Position numbers and translations under genes: made by a program
Part shown: piece by piece, positions 4,043 through 56,736 of the stretch
How positions within the stretch are numbered: position 1 is the stretch's first letter
How the letters are laid out: every line of letters begins with the position of its first letter
The notes under the pieces: model-generated
The model's database searches: none
What the model was told of the DNA's origin: nothing
Seen by the model: only the letters and a program-made list of their open reading frames with translations
NCBI GenBank assembly: GCA_015680685.1
Contig: MNCI01002242.1
Coordinates: 62,001-126,000, forward strand
Reading direction: 5' to 3'
Length of the DNA: 64,000 nt
From: Gnetum montanum
Lineage: Eukaryota; Plantae; Gnetophyta

Positions 4043-4143
4043 CATAATTAGTATTATCACCAACTCCATCACCATTTTAACTTGAGGCCTATAAACAATA
4101 AAGGAGATAACCATTAGTGGTATAAGAATAGAAAACCCTATTA

Positions 4144-6336: not shown

Positions 6337-6730
6337 ACACTAAGGGACTACATTGGCTAGCATAGTGCCAAAGAAGTTCCAAAAATGGAACTATGTCAAA
6401 CATTGAGGGACACAGTTTCAAAAAAGGAAATATGCCAAACACTAAGGGACTATACTAGCCATTATAGTCCTGACGTAGTTTCAAAAATAGAAATATGCCA
6501 AACACTAATGGATTACATTGGCCAACATAGTCTCAACGTTGTGGAAAAAACAAAAATATGTCAAACACTAAGGAACTACATTGGAACTAATGAACTACAT
6601 TGGCCAACATAGTCCTGATGTAGTGCCAAAAATAGAAATATTCCAAATGTTGAGGGACTACAGTGGCTAGTGTAGTCTCAATGCAGTGCTAAAAATGTAT
6701 CCATAGCAAATTCCAAGGGACTATGTTGTC
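6337..6730. repeat. 63-bp tandem array (~6 units) with palindromic core GGGACTAC(G)TTGGCCAAC(G)TAGTCC
   Basis: Units start near 6337, 6400 (partial), 6439, 6502, 6565 and 6647. The periodic TLRDY peptide in the ORF track reflects this array. Confidence 0.85.
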
Positions 6731-18964: not shown

Positions 18965-21900
18965 GTAAATGTCTCATCCATTCTTTTGTGAATCATTTGT
19001 TTACATTTACAACATTATATCATTTTCAATGTTGTTTCTAGCCTTATGTGCTCTTTTAAGAGCATCCCATAATTTCTAGGCAAGTATGGACCTCAACCCA
19101 CCTAGGCCTAAAAGTGGTAACTTATGACTTACTAGGATCTAAAACTGGAAACTTATGGTCCACCAAGACCTAAAACTAGCATTATGGCCTACCAAGGCCT
19201 AAAAATAGTGAAGAAATGGCCTTTCAAGGCCTAAACCTAGCATCCAAATAACCCTTGGAATGGGTTCCAAGCATTAACCATGACCATAGAACTTTATCAT
19301 CCTTGACATTTTTGGAAGCAGCAATCAACATACATGAATCCTAAACCTTGGTAAGGGGTAAAACCTTCACAAAGCTTGCCATTTTTGGCATCCATGCTAG
19401 GGAAATTCTACCCAACATGGACCCAACATTGACTAAAGGGTGTAACACCTATAATTGCCTCCCAGTATCCATCTAGCCTAAATCTGACCCTTGGAGTAGG
19501 CCCACATCATCTAGAACCCTTCTAGTCATCCCCGATAGCCCCAAAGCCTTACCAAATGTAGTAAAAAGTGTTCAAAATCATAGGATTTTGTGCATCCACA
19601 CTAACAAAGGCCTCTTCCATGTTGGACAATGTGGATATAGCGTGGACAAATGGGATATGATTTAAATTGCTATAATTAACCACATAGTAGCCATTTTTCA
19701 AACCTAACACTCCTTGACAACCTTTAGTAGCCTAATTTTGTCTTAAAATAAGTTGATTTTTCATTCATATCCTTCTCCACATTGGTGACCCCTCTCTCCA
19801 TGTTTCCTAGCATGATGCCAATGTGGAAGCCTAGGGAGTATGCAATAAAACCAAGTTTATAACCAAAAATAGCCTAATAAGCTACCCTTTGATCTCTAGA
19901 CCCTCCTAGAACCTGTCAAAGCCTCCATGTACCTTAAAATTGATAAAAAAAAATGGCACAACACTATCATTTCCCTCTCATCTATGCTAGGGCCATCATG
20001 CCGAGCATGGAAAAGGAGGGATGGTTGCATGAGGTACCTAGGAACCTCAAAACTGGTGGATTTTGACATAATATATTGACAATCGACACTAGAAACCCTA
20101 GACGCTAACATGTATGGTTGATTTGCTATTAAAAGAGCCTAGATTTGACATTTTTGGTTGCTCCATGTTAGGGGAGACCTCATCCACACTAGCTAGCATG
20201 GATATAGCTTGGGAGACTCATGGAGGATCCTAGATACATCAAAACAATACCAAATTACCTTGTACTTGCAGCAAAACCTTGTTAGCCCTTTCAAAATCCA
20301 CCAGACTTCTGGAAATCAATAAAAATCAATACTTTAATGATTCTCAATACTGGGGAGGACGTTATCCACATTGGGTAGCATGGAGCTACCATGGAACCAA
20401 AGGGATGACTTCTAAAACCACTTCGAAACCCTTCAAATTGCCTAATTTTGATACCAAACACTAGCACTTGACCCCTATAGCCCAAAAAGCTTAAAAACCT
20501 TGTCAAATATTATTAAAAGTGGCCAAAATCTTGGATTCAAGTGTATCCACACTAGAGGGGGATCCTATCCATGCTGAGGATCCTAGCCCCACTATGAATG
20601 GAAGGGAGTGAAGCCAAACTAGTGAAATTTGCATGGAAATTGACTTCTAGCAACAATGGAACCCTTCTAGAAGCTACCAAAATTCCATAAGTAAAACAAA
20701 ATAGCTCAAAATTTTCCTACCTAGAGTCTCCATGTGGGGGAGGATCCTATCCATGATGGGTAGCATGGATCTAGTGTGGAACTAGAGGAGTAAGCTCAAG
20801 AACCATCTAAAAACCCTCAAAATTGCTAGATTTTGATCCTAGGATTCAACCATCAACACTAGCAACCTTGAAAATGTGCATGCATGACCAAAACTAATAA
20901 AAATAGCAAAAAATAGGCTTCCTTGGATCTTCCATTCTAGGGATCATGCCATTAATGTTGGTTAGCATGGATCCAGATGGAAACTAGGAGGTAACACCAA
21001 AAATAACTTAAAGACCTACAAACCTACTAAAATTTGGCCTTACACCCTAGCCCTGAACCTCAAAAAATCTGAGAACTAACATGCATGATCAATTATGGTC
21101 AAAACTAGTCTTGATCTAAGATTTTTAATCCATCCATACTGGGGAAAGCCTCTTCCACATTGGACAACATAGAACTAGCTTGGAATAGTTGTCTTTCCAC
21201 TTTTGGTAGCAGATTGACACTCTTGGAGATTAAAAACCTACACGAAAGAAGTGTAAGACCTTTGGTCCTTAAATATCATCAACTCACATCTTCCATAGAG
21301 CAACTTTCTCAGTGTGGATCAAGGAGGATGTAACCTTACATAGCCTCATACATTTTTCAAACATGACCAAAATTAGTTAAAAACTTGGGAAATCATGGTA
21401 TGCAAACCTAGAGGCCGAAAACCCTGGTTGATGTGCTTCCAAGCCACTCAAACATCAAGGAACAAGAACACCCCCATTCTTCCATGCTAGTCCTATCATG
21501 CTTAGGATGGAAAAATGGGAAAACTATCCCAAATTGCTATATACTTTAAACCCTCTAAAATGGGCTCAAAATGTAGCTAGAGGATGCACAACTATCATAC
21601 CTTAGTTTTAGTTTCCCATGCAACCTTGTTTGATCCTATTTCAACACAAATTCAAATTATCCACATTAAGCCCCCTTCTATCCATGGTGGCTAGCATGGA
21701 AATAGGGGGGGGGGGGGGGGGGGGGGGGGCGGTGAAGCTTTAAAGCTTTCTTTTTGATCATTTTGTACCTTCAAAGTGATCAATTTGGATAGATCTGGCC
21801 TTGCGCTATCTTGGGAAGGTCCTAAAACCCTAACTTTGATGCTCTGGATGTCATGCAATACACTTTCCTTTATCTCCATGTTAGCTTCATGCTAGCTAGT

Positions 21901-22806
21901 GTGAAGGATGTTTTCAAGCTTCAAAGAAGGGCTCTTAGGGTTGAAACTACTGCTAAGACTAGTTAATTTCCTTTCCCAGTCAACTACATTGACATGCAAA
22001 CCATTAGAGGTTGAAAAGTAACCAGAATGACCCTAAGAAACTATCTAGATGTTCCATCCACACTAGGATCACCCCTTCCATGTTGGCTAGCTTGGAAACA
22101 GGTGGGGTCCAGTGTGGAAGCCTTAAAAGCCTTACTTCTTCAATTCAAACAGCCCAGAAACAACCTTCGCTGATGCCCAAAGTTATCCAACACCATTGTA
22201 TCCTTAAACCATGTCCCACTAAGGCCTAAAACTAGTAATATCTAATCTTGTTTGATAATAATTAGTCAATCTATATAACATGCATTCCATTTCACTTGAT
22301 TTGACCTTATTTCATGGTGTTTCAAGTTGTTTTTGACATTGTTTTGCATTGTTAACCTTCTTGGCCATTATATGATCACTAATAACTACAGTATCACCAT
22401 ATTCACCTTATTCTCTCCATTATAACCTTTATTGATCGTGTTTAACCTTTTTTTAGCCTTTTATGGGTGTTAGGTTGATGGGGTTTGACCATTCTTGATC
22501 ATCATTTGACACCATGTAGCTATGGCTTACCAAGGCCTTAAATTGGCAACATTTCCTGCTAAGGCCTAAAATTGGAAAAATGTAACCATATTTTACCATG
22601 TTTGACCTTGTATTATCTTGAACTCATGCATTGTAGCCTTGTTTACCCTATTTAGATACTAGTGTGGTCTTTTTTGCAACATGTTTGTCTATCTTATGAA
22701 ATATTACTGTGATATCTTGCATTATTAACATTATTTTATTTATCTTTATCAATTTTAACAATATTATTACATAAGTGTGACTTGATGTTCTTATGTTGTC
22801 ATGTAT
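18965..22806 (+). other. candidate PR-RT intron of copy 2
   Basis: Donor CAT G|GTAAAT at 18965 (alternative CAG|GT at 18958). Decayed acceptor ttatgttgtcatgtat at ~22806. Confidence 0.55.
19390..22110. repeat. array of ~15 palindromic ATCCA(C)GCTGG..CCAGC(G)TGGAT units, ~185-190 bp period
   Basis: Units near 19615, 19797, 19995, 20182, 20363, 20567, 20749, 20950, 21152, 21481, 21680 and 22076. Collinear with 42700-45240. Confidence 0.8.
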
Positions 22807-31221: not shown

Positions 31222-32156
31222 TGAAACACCATCAAATTTGAATGTTGTAACCTTTGTAACCTCATACCATGAAACTCAAGGCTAGACCTCATTATATATG
31301 TGAAGATTGTAATCCATAAGGTGTAATATCACGTCCTTTATATCTTTAGGGCTAAAAAATGCCTCATAAGTGGCTAAAGCCTCATTTCCCAAGGTAAAAA
31401 AAGTGATACAATGTATATATTTTGGCTTAGGAGGCTAAAAATGCCTTTTGGAATGGCAAAATTAGCATTTTGATGGGTTTTATGGGCGGTATAACATTTT
31501 CTATGATGGAGACATCTACATGGGGGTATGACTTACCTACCCTTAGAATGGAGGAATGTGATAGCATCAATGCCTAGCGTGGAAGGATTTGACATCATCC
31601 ATGCCCAGTGTGGAGGGTATAGCCCTTACCTCCTAGCATTGATACATCATATCTTTAACATTTATTCTCTCTCTCTCTCTCCCAAGTGTCGATCCAACAT
31701 AGCCAAGATCTCAAAACAGTACTAACTCTAGCAAGGATCCTCCACATCAATGTTGCTATTGGATGTCCCAATGTGGGTGGAAAGATCCAACATGGATGAA
31801 ATTTATATTTACTATTTTTAGTAAATGGAATGGAATTTATGCCATGGGGTTATAACACTTACCCCATATGGTGACCCCCCTTGATTTGCATACCCACCAC
31901 ACCAACATGTAGCCAAAAGTTGCAGTAATCAAGTAAAAATTTGTAGCACCAATTTAGCATAATTTGTAGAAGGATTTATGGCCAAAAAACCTATAAAACC
32001 TAAGTTCCTATACCATGAAATGATTCCACACTTTTGGCATTTTGCATACTTTGGCATTTTGGAAACTTGAGAGCTCTTGCAACCTTGCAAAAATGCAAAT
32101 TCTCAAACCCCCAACATGGAACTACTGTAGCCTATTATCCCCCCTTAAGATCTATG
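31222..32156 (+). repeat. 5' LTR of Tat copy 3 (runs into assembly gap)
   Basis: Aligns with 52118-53000 at roughly 85% identity by eye. Confidence 0.9.
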
Positions 32157-35600: not shown

Positions 35601-36288
35601 TTTCATGATAGTAAAATCAAGGCCAATCCCCAAAATAGTAAAGTGACCAAAGCTCCTCTTTTCATAATGATATGAGTGGGGCAATATAAGATGCATCGAG
35701 TGCATGTGAATGATGGGGCTATGATGAATGTCATCCCATGCACCATAGTTGCATATTTAGGCTTAATAGAGTAGATACAACATACTGCAACATTAGCTCT
35801 CAAGTTTTTTAATGGACCGTGGTTTGCTATTAAGGGATATATCTCCTTAGACCTTGCGGTAGGGGAGCAATTTCCCACAAATGCAAATTTCTTGGTTGTA
35901 GAGAAAACACTCAAATTTAACCTTATCCTAGAAAGACCTTGGTTGGCTCAACTACAAACCATATCCTCACAAATCCACCAAGAGGTCCACCTTTCTTACA
36001 AGGGAGGTAAAATAATCATTCATGGTGATAGCACAATTCCCCTAGCTATTAACAATGTAATTATAGAATAATGGTTTGAAGTGGAACTTTAGGATGAAAC
36101 TCCCAGTCACAAAGTTAAGCAACCCAAGAGATGGGGAAAAGCCAAAAATGATAACAATGGGATGTGGGACATGCTATGTAAAGAGGTCCCCTTCAACATC
36201 ATCAATGAAGGGGATGGAAATACAAACTAGTATAAAACAAGTTTTACATGTTTTATAATCTCTCAAAAATTAGGAAGCACTTGCACAA
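32656..36288 (+). pseudogene. gag-protease pseudogene of Tat copy 3
   Basis: FMKYNCKGDPNAHL, FCHYHQFSGHDTDF, and protease VHVNDGAMMNVIP...NLILERPWL. Confidence 0.85.
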
Positions 36289-37089
36289 GTAATGTACACC
36301 CTTGATCCTTCCATCTTATGCCCCTCTGACATTGTAACCAATATGTATTTATAGCCAGTTAGCCTAGATTTCCTTGTTGTCTCTTTACACCTTTCTACTT
36401 GCTTTATTTTAATCTTTTTCCACATGTAGCATAAGGATTTACTTTTTTTGCATTTTTATTTATCAAAGCCTTTTTGTTTCTTTGTTTTCCTTTTCTTAGC
36501 ATGATATAAATTGCAAAAACCTCATAAAAATTATAAAACTAGGAAAACCATAAAAATCTTAAAATATAAAACAAACAAAAATATGTCTCTCCTTACAACT
36601 CGGGCCCACCATGACCTAAAACTGGAAATAACTCATGGCCCACCATGGCCTTAATTTGGCAAAACCCTTTTACAACCACATAACATATGGCCCAACCATG
36701 GCCTAAAACTAGCAAGTATCCCATGGCCTTAACTCACAATTGATATTATAACATATATGCATTCTTAGCCTACAACTTTATAGTCATTTTCATTGTAGCC
36801 AATGTAGCCATCTACAACATAGTTATTTAAAACATTTATAACCTTAAGACCTTAAATAGTAAATCCATAAACATCATATATAGCTAAAATTTAAACTAAA
36901 ACTTAAAACGTAAAACCTTTAAACATACATAGCCATAGCCACATTGTGTGGCACAAATGTCAAAACAATAAACAACTATAAACTGTCTACAACTGAAAAA
37001 TTGGCCAATACTAGCCATACAACATCCATTGAAAATCAAAATGAAACAACAACAACAACAAAAACTATCACAACAGGAATCTAGCAATA

Positions 37090-40000
37090 CTATGTGGCAT
37101 CTAGGGAAGGAGGTAGAAGATCACCATCATTACCATTGCCACTGAGGTAGCCAACATTTCCTAGTGCCTATGACATAATAACATAAGATCAATCAGTAAT
37201 AAAACAATAAAAATGATAACTTAAACAAAACCAAAATGATAAAACTAAAAGCAAGTCGTCAAACCTGCAAGGAATCTAGCTCAATGACTGCTGGGGGTAG
37301 ATGTTGAAGACCAATCCTTAAATGATGGAGAATCTAGTCTTCCATCATGTTGGCCTAGTCAACATCCCTAAAATTAATCCCTATGAGGATGTTTGTGGGG
37401 TCCACCTAGGTCCAATCTAGTGGGTCTTATAACATCATAGCCATAGGAATCTCACCTGTAGCCATAACGATCTTAGGAGTAGGAGATTTGGCAACCATGA
37501 AAGTGCTATCAAAGAATCTGTAAGCACTCTTAGCTTGAATTCTCTAGATGAATAGCTCCATCTTATACCATTCAACCATCTCCTCCTTCAACCACTTTAA
37601 GCATGCCTCTTGATTAGATTTTTACTACCTCTTATGATCCTTTTGTGCTCGGGCCGACTATAAGACCTAGCCACAATAATCCTTCTAGTCCTTGACTTTT
37701 TGGGAGATCAAATTCATTTAAATTATTTGCTCAACCATCTCCCTAGCAAGGGAAACCTTATCATGGATGTTGCGCTAGTAGTAAGCCTAGGTGATCTCTT
37801 TGGTTCATAAGTTCTTTGAGGTAGCCACTTGGGCTTTCACAAAGGCCTTATGATCCTCAAGGTTCCTAATCCTCTCAGCTTGCCCCTTGGTCTCCTCCCT
37901 CAAGGCCACAACTTGCTCCCATAGGGATTCATTAGGCCTTTAGAACTCCCATGAATTTTTTGCACATGAGACTACAAGTTCAGTAGCAATTTCATATAAC
38001 TTTATGGGAACATTTTGAGTGTTAGAGAGGACCTTTGATAAGGAATCAAACTCCATGTCATAGTTCAGGTCCCATGCAAATGATGGCATTGTAAACAAAT
38101 CATGATCATAAATATAACCATAAGCACAATATACAATCTAAAATAGCCATAACATAGATATGACTCATAGCAAACAAATTAAGGCAAATAAAACATAACT
38201 CTTCCTGATCTTGGGTGAAACCAATTGATGATGTCCTTAAAAACTTCACACATGAATTCCATCTTATCTGGAACCTCTAACCAAGGTTTCACATGAAACT
38301 TAGGTATAGAGGTCTTTACCTATGGCTAAGGAACTACAATAAGCATAATAATAATCAAAATGTTAGAGAAAAAAACATAAAATCATAGGATATAATGAGT
38401 AGCATTAAGACACATGCATACATGGCTCCTTCTTTCGGATGATGATGGGGGATGCACCTTGCAATGGCTTACTAAACAAGGCATCTAGTCATCTAGATCA
38501 ATGTTGTCTAATCCTTTAGCCTCATGTTTCTATTAGAGTGTCTACTCTACCTACCTTTGTTCCTCTACAACTACAACAATGGCATGCCTCTATGCCTCCT
38601 CTATTGTGGTAGCTACATGTCTTCGCTCCTCCTCCTTAGTGGTAGCTTGGGCTTCCATGTCTTGACACTTATCTACAATCATAACCTATAAAACAAGTTA
38701 ACATGCATAGCCATAAAACATAGAACATACCATAAATAATCACTAAAACATAGTAAAACTTATTGGTAACTACTTAATTTGACCTATTAAGCTTCAACTT
38801 GATCTTCTTCATGGTGGGTGGTTCCAATGCTGGTGGTGCTTCCTCTATAGGCCATTTTAATTTCTCCCTAGCTACCTCATCAACCTCGGAATGCAACTCT
38901 TGGACCCTCTTGACATTCGTTAGAACTAAAAGGGGGCTCCTCCCCTATGCTGTCAGGGGAAGCACATCGCCTAACATCAAAATTCTTACTAGTAATAGAC
39001 AATGAGTCATCCATCTCCTCTAGTGAACTTTGGACCTACATGGTAGGATAAATATGCTTTATCTAAGGCCTAGAGAGCTGGTTAGGGTCTTGGGCCATAA
39101 AACATGCACCCCTCCTCACCACCAAGAACTCCATAAACCTCTTCAAATAACTTGTAAAAAATGCATAATACATGTAGATTATGGTAGAGGTATATTTGTA
39201 GAGTTTGAGGATCTCCTCTTGAAGCCTTGAAACCAAGGAAGTAGCCCAATTGAATTGCATATCCTCTATTAGAACCTTCTTAAATGTTCATCCCTATGCA
39301 ATACCGATCACCTTCTTTTGTGAAAATAGTTTGGGAAAGGTGCAAGATCAGTACAAAGAATAAGATTCCTTTGCTTTGGAATTCATGAAGCCATCCAAGA
39401 TAAGCCTGGAATGGCCCTTACTAGCATTGGACCACTTCTTAACTTTCTCATGATGGCCAACCTCCTTCACTAGTTTGGTGGCAACATTTATCTTGTCTAC
39501 AGGAATGCCAAAAAAGTCATAGAAGGTCTCATCATTGATAGGAATGTTGATCGATACACCTAGTACTATGGTGCTAAATTGATTTGATCCTACATTGAAG
39601 GAGTTAATGACATTTAGCATCTCTACAACAAGGATGGAGGTGGTAGGTTCCATAAAATCATCAAGCGATCCTACACGTTGAATGTTTACTTGGATGCTTC
39701 TAGGCACCTATCGTCTCAGCTACTTTTATGCTAGCCTTACCTCACCACATTTTAGGATGAACGTATCCTCCAGGCATTCTGAAAGGGGTAGGATGATGTT
39801 AAAACTAGTGGAAGGTCCTATAGGGCAACAAAAAATGCTTAGCATCAACATAGGCACACCTAACAAAACCAAGATATAGTCATAGAAACATTATGTAGAA
39901 TGTGACAAACCATTCTTATTCTCACCTTTCTTCTTCTTGCTCGGGGAAGTTCATGTGGGGGTCCTAGCAACAACACCCTTCTCCCTAACATTCTTGAAAG

Positions 40001-42095
40001 CCACCTACTAGCTATGTGTTGTTTTGGCAACCACACGTTTCTTGTAAACAAGGATAAACATATCAGTGTATTTATCAAAATCCCCTCTTAACTACTCATA
40101 TACAATAGTTCTGATCTTTGGGCCTTTGGTAAATTTAATTAAAGTAGTTTGGCTACTTCCAAGGTTTGATCATTCTTGATCAAGTCCTATTCATTAACCC
40201 TATACCTACAAGATGTTCATAAAACAAACAAGTTAAGAAAAGTGACTAAACTAGTAAAAAGCCAAAAATGTTAGGAAACTATAATAACCATGCTTAGCCC
40301 TGTAGTTGGTACACTCTGCCAAGTGGGTTCTAGAATAGTGTGTGGACTTTGTGTACCACCATTAGAGTACTATTAGCATTATACTGAAAATACTCTAGTG
40401 TGTTCCAGATCTCCAATAAGTAACATGTGTCGATGCTATCCCTAGTCTCCACTGACTCTCCTACTACTAAAGTTTTAGGATCATCAGTTATGAACCTGCG
40501 ATTAGTCTCGTAGACCTAGGTAGCAAGGTCTTCACTATAATCCTCACCACATCTATGGACAAGTATGTCCATATCATCACACTAAAGTTCTATAGGGTGT
40601 AGGTAAGGAATTCCCTTGTCCCTGGTCAAAACCATAGTGAGCCTCATTCCAAAATTAAGTTTAGAAGGGGGATGTAAGCCTTGAGTTGGTTGATATAGCA
40701 TAATATTCCCACCAACTCAACCACTATGAGGATAGGTTTTATTAGTTCCCTACATGAAAAATAAAAATACCATTAGGACCATGTTTCAACACTTAGAATT
40801 TCTTGAACAATTTTACCAAACATCATAGTTGGGGGTAAAATTAGACCCTATAAAAAACTCTAATGTGTTGGCTAAAATTTGTTTATAAATTCAACATCAA
40901 CATTTTTACAACCTTTAAAGGCCTTATACATCATAGCCAAAACTTCATGACCAAAATTATGCCTTAGTTTAAAACAACGTTAACATGAAAACACCCACTA
41001 AAAGCTAGAAAACAACCATAGGAGAATACTTACTAAAAATAGTAAACCTTTTTAGTAACATTGAATCCAAATTTATAACACTGCCAACATCCTTAGGCAT
41101 CTCTAGGGGCATGAGATATTGACAAAGAAAAATTTCCAAGTGTGTTAGCGCTACCCATCCCCAATGGGTAAAACTAATATAGCCACAACAAAGCTTGATT
41201 TATATAGCCTTAATGAAAAATTCATGAAAATCCATTTTAATCTTGATTTCAGTGATTCCACTAAGGAAGGAATCCTAAAATCATAAGCTTTATAGCCATA
41301 ATTAGAAAAATTGAAAATCCATAGCAATCTTTGCATAAAATTTGATCAAACTAACATGACCGTAGCCGTCACTAGAAACCCCCGTTCATGTAGGGTTGGT
41401 AAGAAATTCATCAAAAATTCATTTTAACTCCAAATGGAGTGATTCCTACACTATTTGAAATCCTATATCAAGCCCTATACACCCATGACCTTAAAAAATT
41501 GGAAACCCATGTCATTTCTTCAAAAAAAATTATAAAATTCTATGAAAATTTGAAAACGGCACAAACATCAAGCATGCAACATAACCAAAATGGTCAAATA
41601 TCCCTCATTAAAACTCCAAATTGAACAAGGACATAGCCAATTGAAAGCTTAAATCTAGCTCTAAAAACACAAAACCATAAATTTTAACAATTTCTAACTA
41701 ATTTATTAAAAAAAATTCAAAATTATGATTTCTTTTTTACCAAAACTAGTATAAAACACCAAAAACCTAATTTTAAAACCTAATCAAATGAAGCCAAAAT
41801 AACCAAACGATTGTAGATGCCTTAAAAAACATCAAAATAGGGGATATTATTTTGTCAAATTTCAATTTTAGCACATATAATGGCCTAGTTCTAGAAAAAT
41901 AGCCCTATCCAAAACTAAAGAAAACATTAAAAAAAAAACAATTAGGAAACACACAAAACAGCTAGTAATGGCCTACCTTGGGGTTATAGCATGTAAGCTT
42001 TGCATAACAACAAGCCTAGCTTGGTGTAAGATGCCCTAGGCTACTACATCTACCTCTTCAATCTTTCAATTTTTGCTACTTCCTCCTTTCCTCAT
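37090..42095 (-). pseudogene. antisense multi-exon accessory gene (unknown N-terminal part, retroelement extra-ORF-like domain, coiled-coil C-terminus)
   Basis: Minus-strand GT-AG introns at 40750-41976, 39860-39925, ~38688-38773 and ~38335-38421, plus weaker ones near 40206-40290, 38090-38198 and 37195-37264. Long same-frame exon with INDETFYDFFGIP and QFNWATSLVSRLQEEI. Most stops can be explained by C>T/G>A decay. Confidence 0.7.
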
Positions 42096-42559
42096 GATTT
42101 TTGCCACCAAGACTAAAGAAACTTGAAAGTCTGAAGGATTTGGAGTAGCAACGTTGCCTAGGGAATAAATCTAAGCCAACCATGCTAAAGCTTGATGAGC
42201 CTTGAAGCAAGATTTCTACCAAAGCTCTAATCCAATGTTCTATGTGATGGAAGGAAAATGGTATGTATTATTTTTGGCAAAGCTTAACATAAAACCTAGA
42301 TCCAAAAGCTAAACACCTCTTCTCAGATCCCCTTTACCAATTTTGTGCACTAGGACTCATGGTGCACTAAAGTGTGAAGGGGGAAAAGTCTTATGAATGC
42401 TGGGAGTAGTGGGAGATAGCACAAAGTTTAAATTTTTAAATTTCTTGTGGTGGATCCCATCATATGCCTCCCATGCATGGTGTTCCACACTTGAAAACCT
42501 CACCAACACTAGGCTTTTAACCTCTTTGAATACCTAAAAACTATTTCAACCTTATTCTC

Positions 42560-45240
42560 CACTACATCCATGCTGGGAAGCATGGATCCAATGCTAATTC
42601 CATCTCCTTGGCCGCATGACCTTACCCGTTAACATTATTAGCAAATGTGACTAACATAGACAAATCCCAAACCCCAACAAGTGGTATGATATTGGCAAAG
42701 CTTATTACTTTGGGCATCAACGCTGGGGCTATGTTGTTCAACATGGCTCCAATGTTTCCCAAAGGGGGTAAGATCCATACCCATCCTCTAGTTCCTATCA
42801 AGCCCTAATCTGAGCTCTTGGTGTATCCACATGGTCCCAAACCCCTCCAATCACCCCCAATAGCCTCAAAACCTTGTCAAAACAAGTAGAAAGTGATCAA
42901 AACTTTTAGATATAGTTGATCTATGCTAAGGGAAGGTCCATCCATGCTTCCTATCATGGATCCAATGTGGATGGGTGGGGGTGACCTTAAATTGCTAAAA
43001 TTGACCATCTAGTTACCATGTTTTGACTCTAACACCCCTTATTAGCTGCTGGTAACATAGATTGGCTAAAATAACTTAGTTTTTACATCTAAAAATCCTC
43101 CCCATGTTGATGAACCCTCCATCCATGCTACATAGCATGGATCTAGCATGGGTTCCCTAGGGTATGCCATAAATCACTTTCCACAACTTTAAGCAGCCAT
43201 AAAATGAACTTTGATAGCCTAAATATGCTTCCATGATCTCTATTAGTCAACAGTTGTAAATATTTGAGCTAGTTTTTGCATATGAATCCTTTCCCATGCT
43301 AGTGAACCCCCATCCAAAATACCCAACATGGATCCAACATGGCTACTCTAGGGGTATGCCAAAATATTCTATTTTTGTAGTCAAAATAATCTTAAAACCT
43401 ACCCTAGTAACCTTACAACCCTACCGGAGCCTTCCAAAGCCTTTAGTTTCCACAAAATTTATCAGAGATGTCAAAATCCTATCATCCCCCTCTCATCCAC
43501 ATTGGGGTCATGTTGCCTAGTGTGTATAAAAGGGGGATTATTGCATGAGACACCAAGGAGCCTTCAAACTAGTGGATTTTGAAGCTAAATCTTGACCCTC
43601 TATCCCTATAGCCCCAACAACTTCAAAGCCCTATAAAATCTTGCCAAAAGTGGTCAAAAATTTGAATCCAAGTGGATCCATGCTAGGTAAACCTAATCCA
43701 CACTACCCAGCATGGATGAAGGGTTTATGGTCAAAACTCTCATGATTTGCACTAAAATTGACATGTGCTAGCTTTCTTACCCTCTCAGAGACTTTCATAG
43801 CCAAAACTTAATAAAAATCCACTTCATTTCATGATCACTCTTACTCCCATGTTGGTAACCCCCCTCACCCATCCTAGCCAACGTGGATCTAGCATGGATA
43901 CTAAAGAGGTGACCCATTGGAAGCCCATAAACACCTCAAAATGACACCAGATGGCCTTACATGCACCTTAGAACCCTATTAGCATCTCCCAAAGCTCTTA
44001 GACTATACAAAACTAATCAAAAATAGTCAAAGCTAATCCCCTTGGATTATTTATGTTGGCCAATGTATACCTAACATGGATCTAATGGGGTAACCTCCAA
44101 AACCACTTAGAAACCCTCAAAATGACTAAGTTATGATCTCAAACCCTATCCCTTGATATTGGTGACCCTAGAAGCTAACATGCATGGTCGATTTTCTAAT
44201 AAACAGAACTAGATCTAACATTTTTAATCTATCCACATTAGGGAGGCCTGATCCATACTAGGAAGTGTGAATCCATCATGGATGAGATGCCTTTCCACTT
44301 TTGGTAGCAAACTGACACCCCCAAAGATTAAAAACCTACACTAGCAAAGCCTATAACCTCATAGCCTTGATTTTGTACTAGTTTGACCTCATGTTGGCCT
44401 TAAAACATACCAAGTCCCCTCATCCACATTGGATCCATGCTGCCCAGCATGGATAAGTGGGGATGACCATGCATGACCCTGAATAGCCTTAAAACCTAGC
44501 CATATTTGACTGAAAACTAGAGAAATAACTATTTCTGGCACTAGTAGCCTAAAACGTAGTTGATTTGCTCCTGAAACCTTCTTAGAACCAAAAAGCAAGA
44601 GCACCCCTAGCCATCCATGCTAGCTAGCATGGATCCAGCATGGATACTTTCTTGAACACTATTTAATGTTCAAAACCCTTGTGAAGTGACCTCAAAACTT
44701 GGTTTGGGAGTGCACAACTATAGAAACTTAGTTCTAGCTATAATCCAACCTTGTTTGAACCAATTATAGCTTAGATCTAGATCAGCCTCCTTGAGCCTCC
44801 TTCCATCCTTGTTGGCTAGTGTGGATACAGGGCGTAGAACCTTAAAACCTACTTTTTGGTAATTTTTGACCTCCAAAATGATAAATCTTGGTAGATCTAC
44901 CCTACCCTACCTTGGGAAGGCCCTAGAATTATAATTTTGATCCTTTGAATGGCATGTAATCCATTTTCATTGGTATCCATGTTGGGGCCATGCTGCTCAA
45001 TGTGGGTGGCACTTTTAGACTTCAACAAGGGTTTCCAAGGATTGAAATGGATGTCAAAACTATTCTATTTTCTTCCTTGGTCCACTTTGCTAACATGCAA
45101 GTCACCAAGAGTTGAAAACTAATCAAACAAAGCTTGGGAAACCATCTAAATGTCTCATCCACATTAGGGGTCATCCCATCCATGCTGGCTAGCATAGATC
45201 TAGTGTGGGCCGAGCATGAGTCTAGTGTGGATGCTCCAAA
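42560..45240. repeat. array of ~15 palindromic ATCCA(C)GCTGG..CCAGC(G)TGGAT units, mean period ~187 bp
   Basis: Units near 42566, 42729, 42940, 43121, 43312, 43506, 43696, 43867, 44049, 44251, 44433, 44613, 44805, 44987 and 45178. Confidence 0.85.
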
Positions 45241-45932
45241 AACCTTACTTTTTCAACTCAAACAACATAAGAAAAACCCTAATTAATGCTTGAACTCATC
45301 TAGCATCTTGATAGCCTTAAACCATTACTTGCTAAGGCCTAAAACTGACAAAATATAACCCTTTTTTTTATCAATATTAGCCAATTTTTATCACATTCAT
45401 TCCATTATTCTTGATTTGACCTTATCTCATAGTGTATCAACTTGTTTTTGGCCCTTTTTTCACTATTGACACTCTTGGCCATCATATGGTCCCTATAGGG
45501 CTTTATGTTTCCCTAGATTCATTTTATTCTCTTTATCATGACCTTTGTAAAATCTTGTTTTTCCTTTGATTGGTTTTAAATGGTGGGGTTTGACCTTCCT
45601 TGACCACCATTTCACACAATATAGCCCTAGTATGATAAGGCGAAAAACTAACACTATGGCTTGCCAAGGGCTAAAATAGCAAGATCATGATCTTTGTTGA
45701 CCATTTTTGGCCTTATTTCTCATCCTTCACCTTGTTACACCCTATTGTACCTTTTTTGGCCTTTTTTTAGCCCTTGTTCCATTCTGTTTATTTCTATCTC
45801 CTTATAGCCTTGAATGACCTTGTTTGCATTGTATTTAGCATTAGAATGTTTTTGCATGATTTCATATCTTTTTAACATTATTTATGTATTTTTACCCAAG
45901 TTCCACTTAATATGCTTTTAGTTGACATGTAG

Positions 45933-48900
45933 GATTAAAGTATGAGTACCTAGAAGAAAATTAGTTTGCCTTTATGCCTACATGGATCCCATGGTGATAT
46001 TGAGTAGTGTGTTAACCTTAATTGCCTAGATCTTGAGCTTGAGAGTCTTATCAATCACATAGCCTCTATTAAGAAAACTCTTGAATAGCCTAAAAATCTA
46101 GTTAAGACCCTTGACCTTGAGGCTAAAAACATTACTAAAGACTCTCTAGTTGAGGTTTCCATCATGACACAGTGATGAGTAGAAAACCCTAAAACTAAGT
46201 TTCTCACTAGAATCTCAATAGGATCAAGACATCACCAAGGTCCTACAAGATAACATTAAGGTCTTTTCTTAGTCATATGAAGATATGTTAGGTCTTGAGC
46301 CATGTTTAGTCCAACACAATATCATACTTAACCCTAGATTAGACCTGGTTTGGCCCTAGCAGTCCATGATGAAATCACAAAGTTATACCAAGCTAGTTTC
46401 ATTAGAGCTGTTGATTATGTAAATGGGTATCCAACATAGTGGTAGTTCCTAAGAAAAATGAAAGTATTCACATTTGCATCAATTTCTAAGATCTAAATAA
46501 GGCAACCATCCAAGATGAATTTCCTTTACCTAGTATTAATCAACCTATCAATACCACAGTTGAGCATGCCTTATTGTCCTTCATGGATGGGTTCTTAGGA
46601 TACAACTAGATTAGGATCAACCCAAAACATCAACTTAGCACAACCTTCATGGCCCCTTGGGGTATTTTTTGCTATACAGTGATTCCTTTGGCCTTAAGAA
46701 TGTAGGAGCAACCTACCAAAGAGCCATGACATACATCTTTAGTGATAACATGCTAGGTTTGCTCAACAATTACTTAGTCAATATAGCCATTAAGTCTAAT
46801 CTAGTGAAAAAAAATGCTAATAACCTAGATCTTGTGCTTAAATAATTCCTTAAATATGAGCTTAGGCTCAATCCCAAAAAGTGTGTTTTCAATGTCAAGA
46901 CCAATAGGATGCTTGGCTTTGTAGTATCTAAAGTGGGACTACATGTCAATCTTGATAAGGTTAAGGCCATATCCAACTTGGCAGCACCTACTAACCTTAA
47001 GGTGATTTTGGGACAACAAGGCAAATTATAATTTATTCATAGGTTTATCACTAGGCTTATAGACAAGTTACAACCCATGCAGCACTTGCTTAAGAAAGGG
47101 GTTCACTATGAGTGGATAGCTCCATGCCAAGAGGCCTTTGAAAACCTTAAGCAAGAGTTGGCACAACTACCAATAGTCTATCCTTTGCAAGAGGGTAAAT
47201 CATTTCACATCTACCTTGCTATCTCTAACATGTCTATTGGCTCTCTAGTCTATCAAAAATGAGAAGATGGAGAAACATTAGCTCTATACTACCTTAGCCA
47301 TGCATTAGTTTCCCATGAAACATAATTCACTAAAGTGGAGAAGTATTGTCTGGCACTAGTCTTCTCATTAAAGAAGTGGAGAAACTAGCTCTTTAGAAGC
47401 TAGATCAATGTCATTTACTAAGATAACATGATTAGAGCCATAATGACCAACATTTATGAGAGCAACTATATAGCCTAATGGAAAGCCATAGCAGTGGAGT
47501 TTGGCCTTCATTACATCTCTCAGCTCTTAATGAAAGCTTAAGATATATCTATACAACTCACTATTTTGCTTGTTGATGAATAAGAAACCATAGATCTTGA
47601 GTTCCTTGATGAACATGTTAACACCATTAGCCAAGTTCCTGGGGGCTATGAGGTGGTCATGCACTTTGATAGAGCTTCAATTGCCCATGGAACCAGTGCC
47701 ACTACTATCGTAACATTCCCATCTAGTGAAATCCAACCCTCTGCCTATCATTTTGAATTTCCATTCACCAACAACATCGCGGAGTATGAAGGTTTGATCA
47801 AATGGATGATGGCAGCTCATGACATAGGTATCAAATGTTGAATGATCAAGGATGATTCACAACTTCTGGTCAACCAAGTAACTGAGGTTTATGCATGCAA
47901 GGCTAAATATTTACAACCTTATTGTGACATACGGAAGTAATTATTACAACAATTTAGATAAGTTGACATCCAACATATACCTCAAAACAAAAATGCTATA
48001 GCTAATGCAATTACAATGCTAGCCCTTAGTGTGACACCAAATGTGTCTAGCAAGTTTTCCAACTTGGCCATGAACTGTGTTGTTCCCATCATGTAGAGCA
48101 TTAAGGATACCTTTGTGGCCATAGTTCATACTACTCCTACAAGGGAGTGGTATCTAATATCAGATTTTACCTTATGCACAATGAACCTTCACAAGGCCTA
48201 ACTATTGCTCAAAGGGATGCTGTATGTAAATGATCAAAATAGTATGTCATTGTAGGTGATAATACATTATGTCAATAGTCCTATGATGACATATTTTTAG
48301 TGTTCTTGGGTACAATAGAAGCCCAAATAGTCCTAGAGCAAGTTCATGAAGGTTTCTATGGAGGACATATAGGAGTTAGAGCTATGGCTACTAAGATTAG
48401 ACAATTAGGCTATTACTAGTCCTATATGGAAAGCAACTGTCTAAAGAATGTTAAAACTTGTGATACATGCCAATAACAGAGCAATCTCATACATGTACCA
48501 TCAACTGAGTTTCACACTACTCAAATAACCTAGTCATTTCAACGATGGGTGTTGGATATCATTAGATCAATAACACCTAAGTCCTTTCTAGGACATAGCT
48601 TTATCATGAAAGTAACTGAATATTTCACAAAGTGGGTTGAAGCTATTCCCCTGAAAAAGACTACATCCAAACAATTTTGTATATTCATACTTGACAACAT
48701 AGTAGCCCATTTTGATATACCTATGATGATAGTCACTCATAATGGACTACAATTTAGTAGCTAAGAAACAAGGAATTTCTATCACGACCTCGGCATTAAG
48801 TACTTTTTCTCATCAACATATTACCCTTAGGCCAATGGACAAGCTAAAGCAAGTAATAAGGCCATCATCAACTTTCTCAAAAAGATGTTGAAAAATAGCA

Positions 48901-49388
48901 AACGCAAGTTGCATGAGCAGCTTATCCATGCACTTTGGGCCTATAGAACAATCTATCATACAAGAACCAATGTAACTTCTTATAGCCTAGTTTATGGTTC
49001 TAAAGTTGTTTTATCTCTTGAATTGAAGGTGTCTTCCCTCCAAGTAGCCTTATTTGACTTCATCAATGATGAACAACACAAGAAGCTATAGACCATGGAC
49101 CCCAACTTAGTGGAGGAGCAATGGGTGGGAACACTTGCTCACATTGAGTAGTATCAAGAGAGGTAGAAATAGTAACACAATCATAACTTGACTAAGCGTA
49201 AGATCAAGGAAGGTTACCTAGTCCTCAAATCCATGTGTGAGCATGCAAATAAATCCTCAACCAACTAGGAAGATCCCTTCTTGGTCACTAGAGCCTATGG
49301 CATCAAAGCATTTAAGATCATAGACATGAATGGGAATGAGTTGGTTAATTTGATTAATCATTCCTATCTAAAGTCTTACTACATGTAG
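45933..49388 (+). pseudogene. pol pseudogene (RT-RNaseH-archaeal-type RNaseH-integrase) of Tat copy 3
   Basis: VFS*SYEDMLGL; LSFMDGFLGYN*I; FGLKNVGATYQRAM. aRH MHFDRAS...TNNIAEYEGL...DSQLLVNQV (47650-48030). INT YFTKWVEAIPL...ALWAYRT, ending LKSYYM*. Confidence 0.92.
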
Positions 49389-49419
49389 CTTACTAGAACT
49401 GCTAGCCAATGGTCAACAT

Positions 49420-52117: not shown

Positions 52118-53537
52118 TGAAACACCACAAAATTTGCATATAGTAACCTTTGTAACCTCATCCCTTGAAATCTGAGGCTAAACTTCATTGTAAATATGAA
52201 GATTGTAATCCATAAGGTGTAATCTCACATACTTTATACTTTTAGGTCTAAAGAAAATGCCTCATAAGTCACTAAAGCCTCATCCCCCAAGTGAAAAAAG
52301 TCATACAATATCTATATTTAGGCTTAAGAGGGTTAAAATGCCTTTTGGAATGCCAAGATTGGTATTTTGATGGGTTTTATGGGGGGTATAGCATTTTCTA
52401 CACTAGAGACACCTACATGGGGGTATGACTCACCTACCCCCAATGTGGAGGGGTGTGATAGCATTAATGCCAAGCATGGAGTTTGGCATCATTCATGCCC
52501 AGTGTGGAGGGTATAAACCTTACCCCCCAGTGTTGATCCAACATGACCAAGATCTCAACACAGCATCAACTCTAGCGAGGATCTTGTACATCAACATTGT
52601 TGTTGGCAGGTCCAATGTGGATGAAAAGATCCAGCATGGGTGAAATTCTCATTTACTATTTTTAGTAAATGGAATGGTTTTGATGTCATGGGGGTATAAC
52701 ACTTATCCCATATAGTAGCCCCCCTTGATTTTCATACCGAACACACCTGCACGTAGCTAGAATTTTCATCAATCAAGTTAAAATTTGTAGCATCAATTCA
52801 ACATAATTTGCAACAAGATTTATGGCCAAAAACCCTATAAAACTTAAGCCCATGCACCATGAAATGGTTCAATACTTTTGGCATTTTGTATACATTGGCA
52901 TTTTGGACACTTGAGAGCTCTTACAACCTTGTAAAAATGTAGCTTCTCAAACCCCTCAGCATGGAACCCCCATAGCTTGTTATCCCTCCTTGAGATTTGT
53001 GAACCTTTGATATCTATGCTAAGATCCTAGGAACCACAACTCTCAACATTGCTTACTCTAATAGCCTAATTTCCTCACACCTCTCATCCCCCCACATCAA
53101 TAATGCAATAGATCTAATGTGGTAGCAGTGAAGGTTCAAAAGTATTGAAAGTGGAAGGACTTCCAAATCATGGATTTGATGGTAGTAGCTTTATTAGACC
53201 CTGAGCCCCCATGGAAGTGAAACCCCCTTGCTACAATAGGCCATCCTCTACACATTTTCTATACCTTTTTTATTTTTCTAAAATAAAGTTTGCAGTTCCA
53301 TTTGTGTACAAGCTTCATTCATTAGTTTTATTTTGGTGTAATTTTCATTTAGACTTGTATTCCATGTTTGCATTTTTGTTACACCATTTTGCATCTTGTA
53401 AGTCCCTAGGTGATTTGCTAGATCATCCAAGATACCATAGATTTTATTTTTCTTGGGGAGGCTCTAGAGATTTGAGGTCAAAAGCTATGGACACTGGGAG
53501 TTAGTTTCTCCAACAACTAATATTTTCAGTCACAACA
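52118..53537 (+). repeat. 3' LTR of Tat copy 3
   Basis: Direct repeat of 31222-32156. TATA-like cctataaaa at ~52833. The PPT appears deleted relative to copy 1. Confidence 0.9.
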
Positions 53538-56731: not shown

Positions 56732-56736
56732 ACACA

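What the first reader, a model, noticed from the sequence alone, without database searches (positions are those of the whole stretch)
36289..45932. Candidate trans-factor + target-array module inside a giant retrotransposon intron (possible VANC-like anti-silencing system)
Seen: between PR and RT of copy 3 there is an antisense multi-exon gene, and immediately upstream of it a ~15-unit palindrome array whose motif also recurs in the element's LTRs. The non-autonomous copy 2 lacks the gene but keeps the array, as expected for a cis target served in trans. Known: VANC proteins of Arabidopsis VANDAL (Mutator-like) transposons bind short motifs arrayed in their own non-coding DNA and cause sequence-specific loss of silencing. 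Antisense extra ORFs of Tat elements are usually described 3' of pol, not between PR and RT. Inference: the antisense protein may recognise the CG/CHG-containing motif CCAGCGTGG. I have no direct evidence of binding.
Basis: partly seen in the sequence, partly recalled or inferred. Interest (0 to 1): 0.92.

Follow-up and report, generated by a model that had tools for sequence, protein, structure and literature searches.

The report
Palindrome array inside a retrotransposon intron
An old plant retrotransposon carries, in a 9.6-kb spacer inside its pol gene, about 15 evenly spaced palindromes whose motif also sits in its LTR promoters and changes in step with them between subfamilies, which points to a dedicated binding factor; the neighbouring 'antisense gene' proposed to encode that factor cannot be verified in this decayed copy.

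Summary
Partly confirmed. The window holds three old copies of a Tat (Ogre/Retand-like) Ty3/gypsy element. In copy 3, PR and RT are 9.6 kb apart, bounded by a GT (36289) and an AG (45932) inside sequence blocks shared between copies. The array is real: 15 units of about 187 bp (42566-45199), each with the palindrome ATCCAYRCT-N4-AGYRTGGAT. The string CCAGCGTGG never occurs; only CpG-decayed variants do. The half-site is clustered in both LTRs. Copy 2 keeps an orthologous array but lacks 36.15-42.6 kb and also RT-INT.

New here: copy 1 has a different internal palindrome (…AGCGTAGT), and its LTR carries the matching TAG-type half-site. So array and LTR motifs co-vary (8 TAG/0 TGG versus 5 TAG/52 TGG). 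Palindromes were kept while spacers nearly randomised, which suggests selection on a binding site.

The antisense 'multi-exon gene' is not demonstrable. It consists of broken frames of at most 119 aa, with no Pfam or PDB match and no real homologue, and its statistics match chance. A language-model search placed the longest frame nearest DUF1985 (VANC's domain), but only as a weak lead. Nothing links it to the motif.

Unchecked first-stage notes on other DNA of this genome describe the same design.

The parts
31222..32149 (+). 5' LTR of copy 3; it runs into an assembly gap of N at about 32150-32420 that hides the PBS
   Evidence: Self-BLAST matches it to 52118-52996; alignment.
31563..31643 (+). 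Cluster of three half-sites in the 5' LTR (…TAGCGTGGA, …CAGTGTGGA, …TAGCATTGA), about 30 bp apart; further related motifs lie at about 31745-31800
   Evidence: The same cluster occurs in the 3' LTR.
35775..36255 (+). End of the protease coding region and of the gag-PR frame
   Evidence: Motif FLVVEKTLKFNLILERPWL read by eye. No Pfam hit. Homologous to the PR of copies 1 and 2.
36289..45932 (+). PR-RT interval, a putative Ogre-type intron: GT at 36289-36290 and AG at 45931-45932
   Evidence: The donor-like and acceptor-like blocks are shared between copies. Splicing itself was not tested.
36289..42560 (-). Copy-3-specific segment with broken antisense open frames; a possible remnant of an accessory gene, unverified
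   Evidence: Absent from copy 2. The - strand ORF sum is 1104 aa against 680±182 in shuffles. No domain on either strand.
39351..39707 (-). Longest antisense open frame (119 aa)
   Evidence: Only spurious hits among 1.84e9 representatives. Atlas neighbours are unnamed plant clusters and DUF1985 at 0.86. AF2 pLDDT is 37.8.
42566..45199 (.). Array of 15 units of about 187 bp, each with the 22-bp palindrome ATCCAYRCT-N4-AGYRTGGAT
45922..45932 (+). Acceptor-like block TTGTCATGTAG shared by all three copies
46639..49088 (+). RT, RNase H, RNase H-like and integrase remnants of copy 3
   Evidence: RVT_1 weak, RT_RNaseH_2 E 1.9e-7, rve E 5.9e-6. The RNase H-like stretch at 47584-47838 was recognised by eye only.
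52118..52996 (+). 3' LTR of copy 3
52460..52537 (+). Half-site cluster in the 3' LTR
19615..22097 (.). Orthologous palindrome array of the non-autonomous copy 2 (about 14 units)
   Evidence: In one search, 13 of 15 copy-3 units align to palindrome-like sequence in copy 2.
13451..13604 (+). 7.6 copies of the 20-bp repeat TCCTAGCATGGAAGATCTCC in the 5' LTR of copy 2; an expanded half-site cluster
   Evidence: TRF. LTR homology of 13597-14056 to copy 3's LTRs. Counts.
6330..6700 (.). Copy 1 internal repeat with a different palindrome, ACTACRYT-GGCY-ARYRTAGT (TAG-type)
9596..9745 (+). Copy 1 LTR half-sites TAGCRTAGAT (TAG-type), 4-5 copies

Best explanation
The stretch is the greatly enlarged PR-RT spacer, probably an Ogre-type intron, of an old and dead Tat-lineage Ty3/gypsy LTR retrotransposon.

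Its 3' third (42.57-45.2 kb) is an ancient tandem array of about 15 units of roughly 187 bp. The spacers have almost randomised, but each unit keeps a 22-bp palindrome with a decayed CpG at the centre of each arm. The same half-site is multimerised in the U3-like part of the LTRs, and the motif variant changes together in array and LTR between subfamilies. I therefore read the palindromes as multimerised binding sites on double-stranded DNA for one sequence-specific, probably dimeric, factor. That factor would act both on the LTR promoter region and on the internal array, as an enhancer, chromatin-opening or anti-silencing platform with about one site per nucleosome repeat. The identity of the factor, host or element-encoded, is unknown.

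The 5' two-thirds (36.3-42.56 kb) is a copy-specific segment carrying degraded antisense open frames. It may be the wreck of an accessory antisense gene, but this cannot be shown in this copy.

Shown: the anatomy, the motif enrichment, the co-variation, and the differential conservation. Inferred: DNA-level binding, the regulatory role, and splicing of the interval.
For: Palindrome enrichment: 11 hits against 0.05 expected. There are 15 phased units.

Conservation: paralogous arms are 0.68-0.75 identical, whereas spacers match at 0.35 (shuffled 0.24). Orthologous units of copies 2 and 3 are about 60% identical, and 13 of 15 palindrome positions are shared. So the units had diverged before the lineages split, while the palindromes persisted.

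Shared motif: half-site density is 3-9 per kb in arrays and LTRs, against 0.2-1.1 per kb in the antisense segment and control regions. Type-specific co-variation is 0 TGG/8 TAG in copy 1 against 52 TGG/5 TAG in copies 2 and 3 (sequences). Copy 2's LTR has the half-site amplified 7.6 times. LTR sites are direct half-sites, not hairpins, which favours recognition of sequence on DNA.

Context: the GT and AG boundary blocks are shared between copies, and Ogre elements are known to have a spliced PR-RT intron (PMC6317226, PMC12786077). Tandem arrays in non-coding parts of Tat elements are known (PMC6317226, PMC11963269).
Against: There is no binding, methylation or expression data. Between the two dead copies, arms are no better conserved than spacers (0.60 vs 0.58), as expected after death but not positive evidence. 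Units were defined by searching for the palindrome, so the arm-versus-spacer contrast carries ascertainment bias. Co-variation rests on only two motif states in three copies, and could reflect the array having been seeded from the LTR of the same lineage. In copy 3, AGCATGG outnumbers AGTGTGG 17 to 4, so many sites may never have carried CG. The U3 assignment and the TATA-like box (CCTATAAAAC, at about 31990) were read by eye only.
Confidence: 0.45

Rival explanations
1. The antisense segment encodes, from an intron-containing gene, a sequence-specific DNA-binding protein, possibly DUF1985/PMD-like as in VANC. This protein binds the palindromes in the array and the LTRs and relieves silencing. 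Non-autonomous copies that keep the array are served in trans.
For: The cis evidence above applies. Copy 2 keeps the array but lacks the segment. The - strand ORF sum is 2.3 sd above shuffles. The atlas's first hit is 0.91 to a plant cluster. The nearest named families are DUF1985 (0.86), ATHILA (0.80) and PMD (0.79), and 9 of the 10 family-bearing hits share a family or clan with DUF1985. VANC carries DUF1985 and DUF287, and its targets form tandem repeats (PMC5735166). The motif type does not follow gag-PR relatedness: copy 2's gag-PR is closer to copy 1 (75%) than to copy 3 (62%). That fits a separate specificity module.
Against: There is no intact frame and no Pfam hit even at E<=10. There is no PDB hit and no real homologue. 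The 119-aa frame is reached by 8% of shuffles, and stop density is within the null. Atlas scores are below its own 0.9 and 170-feature marks. Sister-copy notes claim a phosphatase-like domain, not a DNA-binding one. Copy 1's slot holds passenger host fragments. Nothing links the protein to the motif.
Confidence: 0.13
2. The palindromes act at the RNA level. They would form 9-bp hairpins on the unspliced genomic RNA, and only there, because they lie in the intron. They would mark that RNA for nuclear export or packaging, or regulate splicing of the giant intron, in the way a retroviral packaging signal or CTE/RRE does.
For: The position is inside an interval with shared GT/AG boundary blocks. 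Ogre elements splice only a subset of transcripts (PMC6317226), yet all three copies keep this interval unspliced, so the spliced RNA is presumably not the template that is copied (inference). Non-autonomous copies retain an array. Export factors for unspliced LTR-element RNA are known, for example Cer1 (PMC12786077). U3 is also present at the 3' end of the genomic RNA.
Against: The sequence of the arms, not just their pairing, is conserved, and no compensatory changes are visible. The LTR sites are single half-sites that cannot form hairpins. The motif type does not follow gag relatedness. There is no Rfam match. The roughly 187-bp spacing has no obvious meaning for RNA.
Confidence: 0.15
3. 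This is a neutral by-product. The array is simply an old satellite-like tandem repeat, of the kind common in Tat/Ogre non-coding regions, seeded from LTR sequence of the same lineage. The palindromes persist because hairpin-prone repeats are favoured by slippage or conversion, and the antisense frames are chance.
For: Internal tandem arrays are common in these lineages, and their function is unknown (PMC6317226, PMC11963269). Spacers retain faint homology. The antisense statistics are compatible with chance. The slot accepts passenger DNA.
Against: Palindromes were retained at 13 of 15 orthologous positions through a divergence that randomised the paralogous spacers. Half-sites were independently multimerised in three different LTRs. 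Copy 1 has a structurally different array (39-82-bp units) that still carries the palindrome type matching its own LTR.
Confidence: 0.2

Closest known systems
Ogre elements (Tat lineage, Ty3/gypsy) with a spliced intron between gag-PR and RT-RH-INT (Pisum, Medicago; PMC6317226, PMC12786077)
   Same: The order gag-PR | gap | RT-RH-INT is the same. GT and AG boundaries sit in blocks shared between copies. The element is large and has tandem repeats in non-coding parts.
   Different: The gap here is 9.6 kb, against an average of about 274 bp. It contains a structured palindrome array and a 6.3-kb extra segment. No PMD-bearing ORF1 was detected. The LTRs are short (about 0.9 kb). Splicing was not tested.
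VANC/VANDAL anti-silencing system of Arabidopsis (PMC5735166, PMC10398659)
   Same: [quoted passage not shown] A weak language-model resemblance links the longest antisense frame to DUF1985, a VANC domain.
   Different: The host element is an LTR retrotransposon, not a Mutator-like DNA transposon. The motif is a 22-bp palindrome at about 187-bp spacing, not a 8-9-bp motif in short repeats. No DUF1985 or DUF287 was detected by Pfam. There is no evidence of binding or hypomethylation, and the gene is not demonstrable here.
Antisense additional ORFs of Retand/Grande/RIRE2 (Transposase_28) with tandem repeats between pol and the 3' LTR (PMC7264820, PMC11963269)
   Same: The Tat lineage, the antisense orientation of the candidate gene, and a neighbouring family-specific tandem array are all shared. 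A regulatory role has likewise been suggested but is unproven.
   Different: The location is between PR and RT, not 3' of pol. No Transposase_28 domain was found. The usual INT-LTR region of copy 3 has no domain. The candidate gene is said to contain introns.
U3 enhancer repeats of retroviruses and LTR retrotransposons
   Same: Direct repeats of a short motif lie upstream of a TATA-like box in the LTR and vary in copy number between copies (3 to 7.6).
   Different: Here the same motif is also arrayed, in palindromic form, several kb inside the element.

Membership tests
Tat/Ogre-type Ty3/gypsy LTR retrotransposon | Two LTRs flank an internal region ordered gag-PR-RT-RH-INT | tested here: met
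   LTR pair. RT_RNaseH_2 and rve in the right order on the + strand. PR and gag were recognised by eye and by homology among copies; they get no Pfam hit.
Tat/Ogre-type Ty3/gypsy LTR retrotransposon | Additional RNase H (aRH) between RH and INT, which marks Ogre/Retand (PMC6317226) | tested here: inconclusive
   The 47584-47838 frame reads …VVMHFDRASIAHGTSATTIV…, which looks RNase H-like by eye, but it has no Pfam hit.
Tat/Ogre-type Ty3/gypsy LTR retrotransposon | Non-coding gap or intron between the gag-PR and RT ORFs, spliced in part of the transcripts (Ogre) | tested here: inconclusive
   The gap is present, with GT/AG in blocks shared between copies.
Tat/Ogre-type Ty3/gypsy LTR retrotransposon | ORF1 upstream of gag, with a PMD in 57% of Ogre elements | tested here: not met
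   No Pfam hit in the upstream sense frames of the three copies. The feature is not universal, and the frames are decayed.
VANC-type anti-silencing module | Element-encoded protein with DUF1985 (and DUF287) domains | tested here: inconclusive
   Pfam finds nothing at E<=10. The atlas places DUF1985 as the nearest named family at 0.86 with 156 shared features, which is lead level only.
VANC-type anti-silencing module | Family-specific short motifs accumulated as tandem repeats in the element's non-coding DNA | tested here: met
VANC-type anti-silencing module | The protein binds the motif and causes local loss of DNA methylation | not testable with these tools
   This needs EMSA or DAP-seq, ChIP and bisulfite data.
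VANC-type anti-silencing module | The protein and its motif co-evolve between related elements | not tested
   Only motif-motif (array versus LTR) co-variation could be shown. Only one copy in the window has the candidate gene.
VANC-type anti-silencing module | Carried by a VANDAL (Mutator-like) DNA transposon | tested here: not met
   The carrier is an LTR retrotransposon.
Retand-type antisense aORF (Transposase_28) | Antisense ORF between pol and the 3' LTR that encodes PF04195 | tested here: not met
   The candidate lies between PR and RT. PF04195 is absent from the antisense pieces and from the INT-LTR region.
FCP1/SCP/NIF phosphatase-like antisense gene (claimed for sister copies in scan notes) | NIF domain with the DxDxT catalytic motif | tested here: not met
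   No NIF Pfam hit. No PDB phosphatase hit. No DxDxT on either strand of 36289-42600. This copy is decayed, so the claim for other copies is not refuted.
Retrotransposon-internal tandem repeat (satellite precursor) | Head-to-tail, family-specific units in a non-coding part of the element | tested here: met
   Phased units and faint spacer homology. The array is too diverged for TRF. It lies in the PR-RT spacer rather than the usual 3' region.

The most novel reading that the evidence does not exclude
A family of plant LTR retrotransposons carries, inside its pol intron, a self-contained recognition module. An antisense, intron-containing gene is protected from loss because its introns are not spliced from the sense genomic RNA. 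Its DUF1985/PMD-like product binds a CpG-bearing palindrome that is arrayed once per nucleosome repeat next to the gene and multimerised in U3. This gives each subfamily its own private anti-silencing or activation code, a retrotransposon counterpart of VANC.
Probability: 0.12. Interest if true: 0.9.

Novelty: new variant of a known kind. Interest (0 to 1): 0.55.

Why it matters
Internal tandem arrays and extra ORFs of Tat/Ogre elements are common, but their function is unknown. This window shows something more specific: an internal palindrome array and the LTR's repeated motif are the same sequence, and they switch variant together between subfamilies. That turns a vague 'repeat of unknown function' into a defined candidate binding site of 22 bp, with two natural variants. 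It can be tested directly by EMSA, DAP-seq or one-hybrid assays, with and without cytosine methylation, and by a genome-wide census of copies. If the factor proves to be element-encoded, this would be the first VANC-like, sequence-specific self-recognition system in an LTR retrotransposon. It could also help explain how such families reach huge copy numbers in giant plant genomes. If the factor is a host protein, the result identifies which regulator these elements have captured.

Tried and rejected
Exact motif CCAGCGTGG: 0 hits.

Tandem Repeats Finder misses the array because the units are less than 70% alike.

Exhaustive HMMER search of the 119-aa frame gave 3 hits. All are artefacts of a bacterial InlB-type repeat protein matching a 32-aa stretch many times.

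The search for homologous proteins was blank for the antisense frame. A bona fide RNase H piece of the same element was also blank, so that blank is uninformative.

Pfam on 42 antisense and 30 sense pieces of the segment gave only noise. The element's own gag and PR pieces also get no Pfam hit, so Pfam excludes conserved host domains only.

The PDB sequence search gave nothing relevant.

The FCP1/NIF lead from sister-copy notes failed here: no domain and no DxDxT. My own by-eye match of KTLVVGESVETRDS to the DLDETL motif did not hold up.

Codon-position composition has no power, because the true pol frames look like the null. Stop density per 300 codons is 8 for the antisense frame, 8 for RT and 7 for INT, against a null of 9.1±1.6, so it also has no power.

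AlphaFold2 on the single sequence gave pLDDT 37.8, so no fold search was run.

Rfam: no match in the window.

tblastx of the segment against the rest of the window found no second copy.

TSD or terminal-repeat test for an independent insertion: the breakpoints cannot be placed at 60-65% identity, and no flanking inverted or direct repeats were found.

Metagenome scans for the antisense frame and for the palindrome were both empty.

A joined spliced model of the antisense gene was deliberately not built or searched. Pieces were searched one by one, by reference.
Full report
WHAT THE WINDOW IS. Self-comparison shows three related, old element copies on the + strand: copy 1 (about 1-9530), copy 2 (about 13450-23480) and copy 3 (31222-52996). 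Copy 3 is bounded by LTR-like repeats at 31222-32151 and 52118-52996 that are roughly 80-88% identical. A run of N (about 32150-32420) follows the 5' LTR and hides the PBS. On the + strand, Pfam recognises RT_RNaseH_2 (47032-47259, E 1.9e-7), an integrase core (48534-48761, E 5.9e-6) and a weak RT tail. The protease end (…NLILERPWL…, 35775-36068) and a second RNase H-like stretch between RH and INT (47584-47838) are recognisable only by eye. This order fits the angiosperm Ogre/Retand branch of the Tat lineage as described in PMC6317226. I hold the subclade only loosely, because the second RNase H and any ORF1 got no Pfam support.

THE PR-RT INTERVAL. The gag-PR frame ends by 36255, and RT-related frames resume after about 45.9 kb. 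The donor-like sequence has a counterpart in copy 2 (GTAAATGT). The acceptor-like block TTGTCATGTAG|GA is shared by all three copies. Ogre elements are known to have a partly spliced intron exactly here, averaging about 274 bp (PMC6317226, PMC12786077). A 9.6-kb version is therefore plausible, but splicing is inferred and not shown.

THE ARRAY IS REAL. The motif as written, CCAGCGTGG, does not occur once in the window. One-mismatch variants occur 14 times against 2.7 expected. The actual repeated element is a 22-bp palindrome, ATCCATGCT-N4-AGCATGGAT. With up to 3 mismatches it gives 11 hits against 0.05 expected, 7 in copy 3 and 4 in copy 2. Allowing Y/R at the centre of each arm, copy 3 has 15 units starting at 42566, 42727, 42940, 43121, 43312, 43506, 43696, 43867, 44058, 44251, 44433, 44613, 44805, 44986 and 45178. 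The mean period is about 187 bp. Copy 2 has about 14 units at 19615-22097. Tandem Repeats Finder misses the array because the units are too diverged.

The centre of each arm reads CG (rarely), TG or CA, which is the spectrum expected if a CpG decayed. In copy 3, however, AGCATGG outnumbers AGTGTGG 17 to 4, so many sites may already have been CATG when the copy inserted. The CG form is an inference, not the majority state.

SELECTION ON THE PALINDROME. Among the 15 paralogous units the arms are 0.68 identical (0.75 with the decay positions collapsed). The spacers match at only 0.35, against 0.24 for shuffled spacers, which is faint but significant homology (Mann-Whitney p = 5e-6). The arrays of copies 2 and 3 are orthologous, at about 61% identity, and 13 of 15 copy-3 palindromes align with palindrome-like sequence in copy 2. 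So the units had diverged from one another long before the two lineages separated, yet the palindromes persisted. That argues for purifying selection while the family was active.

Two caveats apply. The units were found by searching for the palindrome, which is an ascertainment bias. And between the two dead copies the arms are no better conserved than the spacers (0.60 vs 0.58), as expected once selection has ceased.

THE LTR LINK AND CO-VARIATION (the most interesting result). Both LTRs of copy 3 carry three half-sites about 30 bp apart (…TAGCGTGGA, …CAGTGTGGA, …TAGCATTGA; 31563-31643 and 52460-52537), with further related motifs about 150 bp downstream. Copy 2's 5' LTR (homology at 13597-14056) has, at the corresponding place, 7.6 copies of a 20-bp repeat containing TAGCATGGA (13451-13604).

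Copy 1 has a quite different internal repeat (units of 39-82 bp at 6330-6700), but it too contains a palindrome, ACTACRYT-GGCY-ARYRTAGT. Copy 1's LTR has 4-5 half-sites TAGCRTAGAT (9596-9745).

Counting AGYRT[A/G]G sites gives 0 TGG-type and 8 TAG-type in copy 1's array plus LTR. Copies 2 and 3 have 52 TGG-type and 5 TAG-type. Densities are 3-9 per kb, against 0.2-1.1 per kb in the antisense segment and two control regions. The internal array and the LTR thus carry the same motif variant within each copy, and the variant differs between subfamilies.

The motif type does not follow gag-PR relatedness. Copy 2's gag-PR is about 75% identical to copy 1's but only about 62% identical to copy 3's, while its array and LTR motif are of the copy-3 type. 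These parts therefore behave as separate modules.

THE ANTISENSE 'GENE' IS NOT DEMONSTRABLE HERE. Copy 2 matches copy 3 to about 36102 and resumes at about 42606, so about 6.4 kb is specific to copy 3. Copy 2 also lacks RT-RH-INT (46259-49483), as does copy 1. At 60-65% identity the breakpoints cannot be placed to the base. No terminal repeats flank the segment, so the test for an independent insertion with its own termini and TSD cannot be done.

On the - strand there are only broken frames, the longest being 119 aa (39351-39707). Eight percent of composition-matched shuffles reach 119 aa. The sum of frames of at least 50 aa is 1104, against 680±182 (z about 2.3), while the + strand gives 562. 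The stop density of the best antisense frame is 8 per 300 codons. That equals the density in this copy's own decayed RT (8) and INT (7) and lies within the null of 9.1±1.6. Codon-position composition has no power either. A gene that died with the element cannot be told from chance in this copy.

Homology searches gave nothing real. Pfam on all 42 antisense and 30 sense pieces found only noise. The PDB sequence search found nothing. The exhaustive HMMER search of 1.84 billion representatives gave three artefactual hits to bacterial repeat proteins. The word-indexed search gave nothing, but a true RNase H piece of the same element also found nothing there, so that blank carries no weight. The metagenome scans were empty.

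Pfam's silence is of limited weight too. This element's own gag and PR fragments get no hit, whereas a captured host fragment in copy 1 does (NIPA, E 1.6e-9). Conserved host domains are therefore excluded, but a fast-evolving TE-specific protein is not.

The language-model atlas gave a first hit of 0.91 to an unnamed plant cluster. Among named clusters the nearest were DUF1985 (0.86, 156 shared features), ATHILA ORF-1 (0.80) and PMD (0.79), with 9 of the 10 best family-bearing hits sharing a family or clan with DUF1985. By the tool's own calibration this is a lead only. It is nonetheless notable that VANC proteins consist of DUF1985 and DUF287 (PMC5735166), and that PMD domains are reported to resemble DUF1985 structurally (bioRxiv 10.1101/2024.09.27.615353). 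A single-sequence AlphaFold2 model was unusable (pLDDT 37.8).

LEADS FROM THE SCAN'S OWN NOTES. First-stage notes on other pieces of this genome describe the same design many times. Examples are s1-834253, s1-822103 and s1-833461, and for the module idea s1-822320 and s1-828759. Two of them claim an FCP1/NIF phosphatase-like domain in the antisense gene (s1-815464 and s1-822132). These notes are unchecked AI notes. In this copy I found no NIF domain, no phosphatase match and no DxDxT motif on either strand. That neither supports nor refutes the claim for better-preserved copies. A phosphatase would, however, not be a VANC-like DNA binder.

Copy 1's equivalent slot holds unrelated host fragments: NIPA antisense at 4092-4301, PB1 at 5350-5643 (E 2e-4), and CBS at 4876-5043 (E 2e-3). 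This agrees with notes s1-815649 and s1-815550. The PR-RT slot clearly tolerates passenger DNA.

MOST LIKELY MECHANISM. I favour (0.45) the reading that the palindromes are multimerised binding sites on DNA for one sequence-specific, probably dimeric factor. The same factor would recognise the half-site repeats in the U3-like part of the LTR, upstream of a TATA-like CCTATAAAAC at about 31990 (by eye). The internal array would offer about one site per nucleosome repeat, as an enhancer, chromatin-opening or anti-silencing platform. The conservation of sequence rather than mere pairing, the non-hairpin half-sites in the LTRs, and the co-variation all point to DNA-level sequence recognition.

Who the factor is remains open. 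An RNA-level role, with hairpins marking the unspliced genomic RNA for export, packaging or splicing control, gets 0.15. A neutral satellite seeded from LTR sequence gets 0.20.

COMPARISON WITH WHAT IS KNOWN. Known features are the Ogre PR-RT intron; tandem arrays and antisense extra ORFs in Tat elements, which lie 3' of pol and often carry Transposase_28 (PMC7264820, PMC11963269); and VANC with its tandem motifs in VANDAL DNA transposons (PMC5735166). I found no description in the held literature of two things: a palindrome array inside the PR-RT interval sharing and co-varying its motif with U3, and a candidate gene at that position. [quoted passage not shown] An intron-containing gene inside the interval would therefore have been missed by design. 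I rate this a new variant of a known kind. It is not a member of the VANC family: the carrier differs and the defining domain was not detected.

Noticed in passing
window 3600-7700 (copy 1): Copy 1's PR-RT slot holds captured host-gene fragments: a NIPA Mg-transporter piece at 4092-4301 (-) with E 1.6e-9, PB1 at 5350-5643 (+) with E 2e-4, and a weak CBS hit at 4876-5043 (+). The same slot that holds the antisense segment in copy 3 therefore carries unrelated passenger DNA in a sister lineage.
   Followed up: partly
window 23900-27900, - strand: A different Ty3/gypsy element lies in the opposite orientation: rve at 23968-24282 (E 2e-4), RT_RNaseH at 24936-25157 (E 8e-14), and a protease-like frame at 26615-26881. 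One frame there has only 3 stops per 300 codons. It abuts the truncated 3' end of copy 2 (about 23480) and has no enlarged PR-RT gap.
   Followed up: partly
window 1-9530 and 15150-23480: Copies 1 and 2 are both non-autonomous. They keep gag-PR, the acceptor-like block and about 330 bp after it, and the 3' region, but both lack RT-RH-INT with similar breakpoints. Copy 2's gag-PR is closer to copy 1 (75%), while its array and LTR motif are of the copy-3 type, which suggests recombination between subfamilies.
   Followed up: partly
window 28653-29783, 55602-56732, 60355-60779: This is another repeat family, unrelated to the Tat copies: two copies at 82% identity and a third at about 70%. Short tandem repeats lie nearby at 56281-56338 and 61003-61141.
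   Followed up: no
window 36602-36715, 19097-19208, 49387-49570, 45336-45351: A short repeat of about 30 bp (GGCCCACCAWGRCCTAAAACTRG…) recurs just after the protease in copies 2 and 3, and again 3' of the integrase in copy 3. Its function is unknown.
   Followed up: no
window 32150-32420 and 21705-21729: An assembly gap (run of N) directly after copy 3's 5' LTR hides the primer-binding site. A 25-nt poly-G run lies inside copy 2's array.
   Followed up: no
window 35090-35476, - strand: A 129-aa open frame lies antisense to gag/PR of copy 3. It is longer than the 119-aa frame in the candidate gene, which shows that open frames of this size arise here without any sign of being genes.
   Followed up: no
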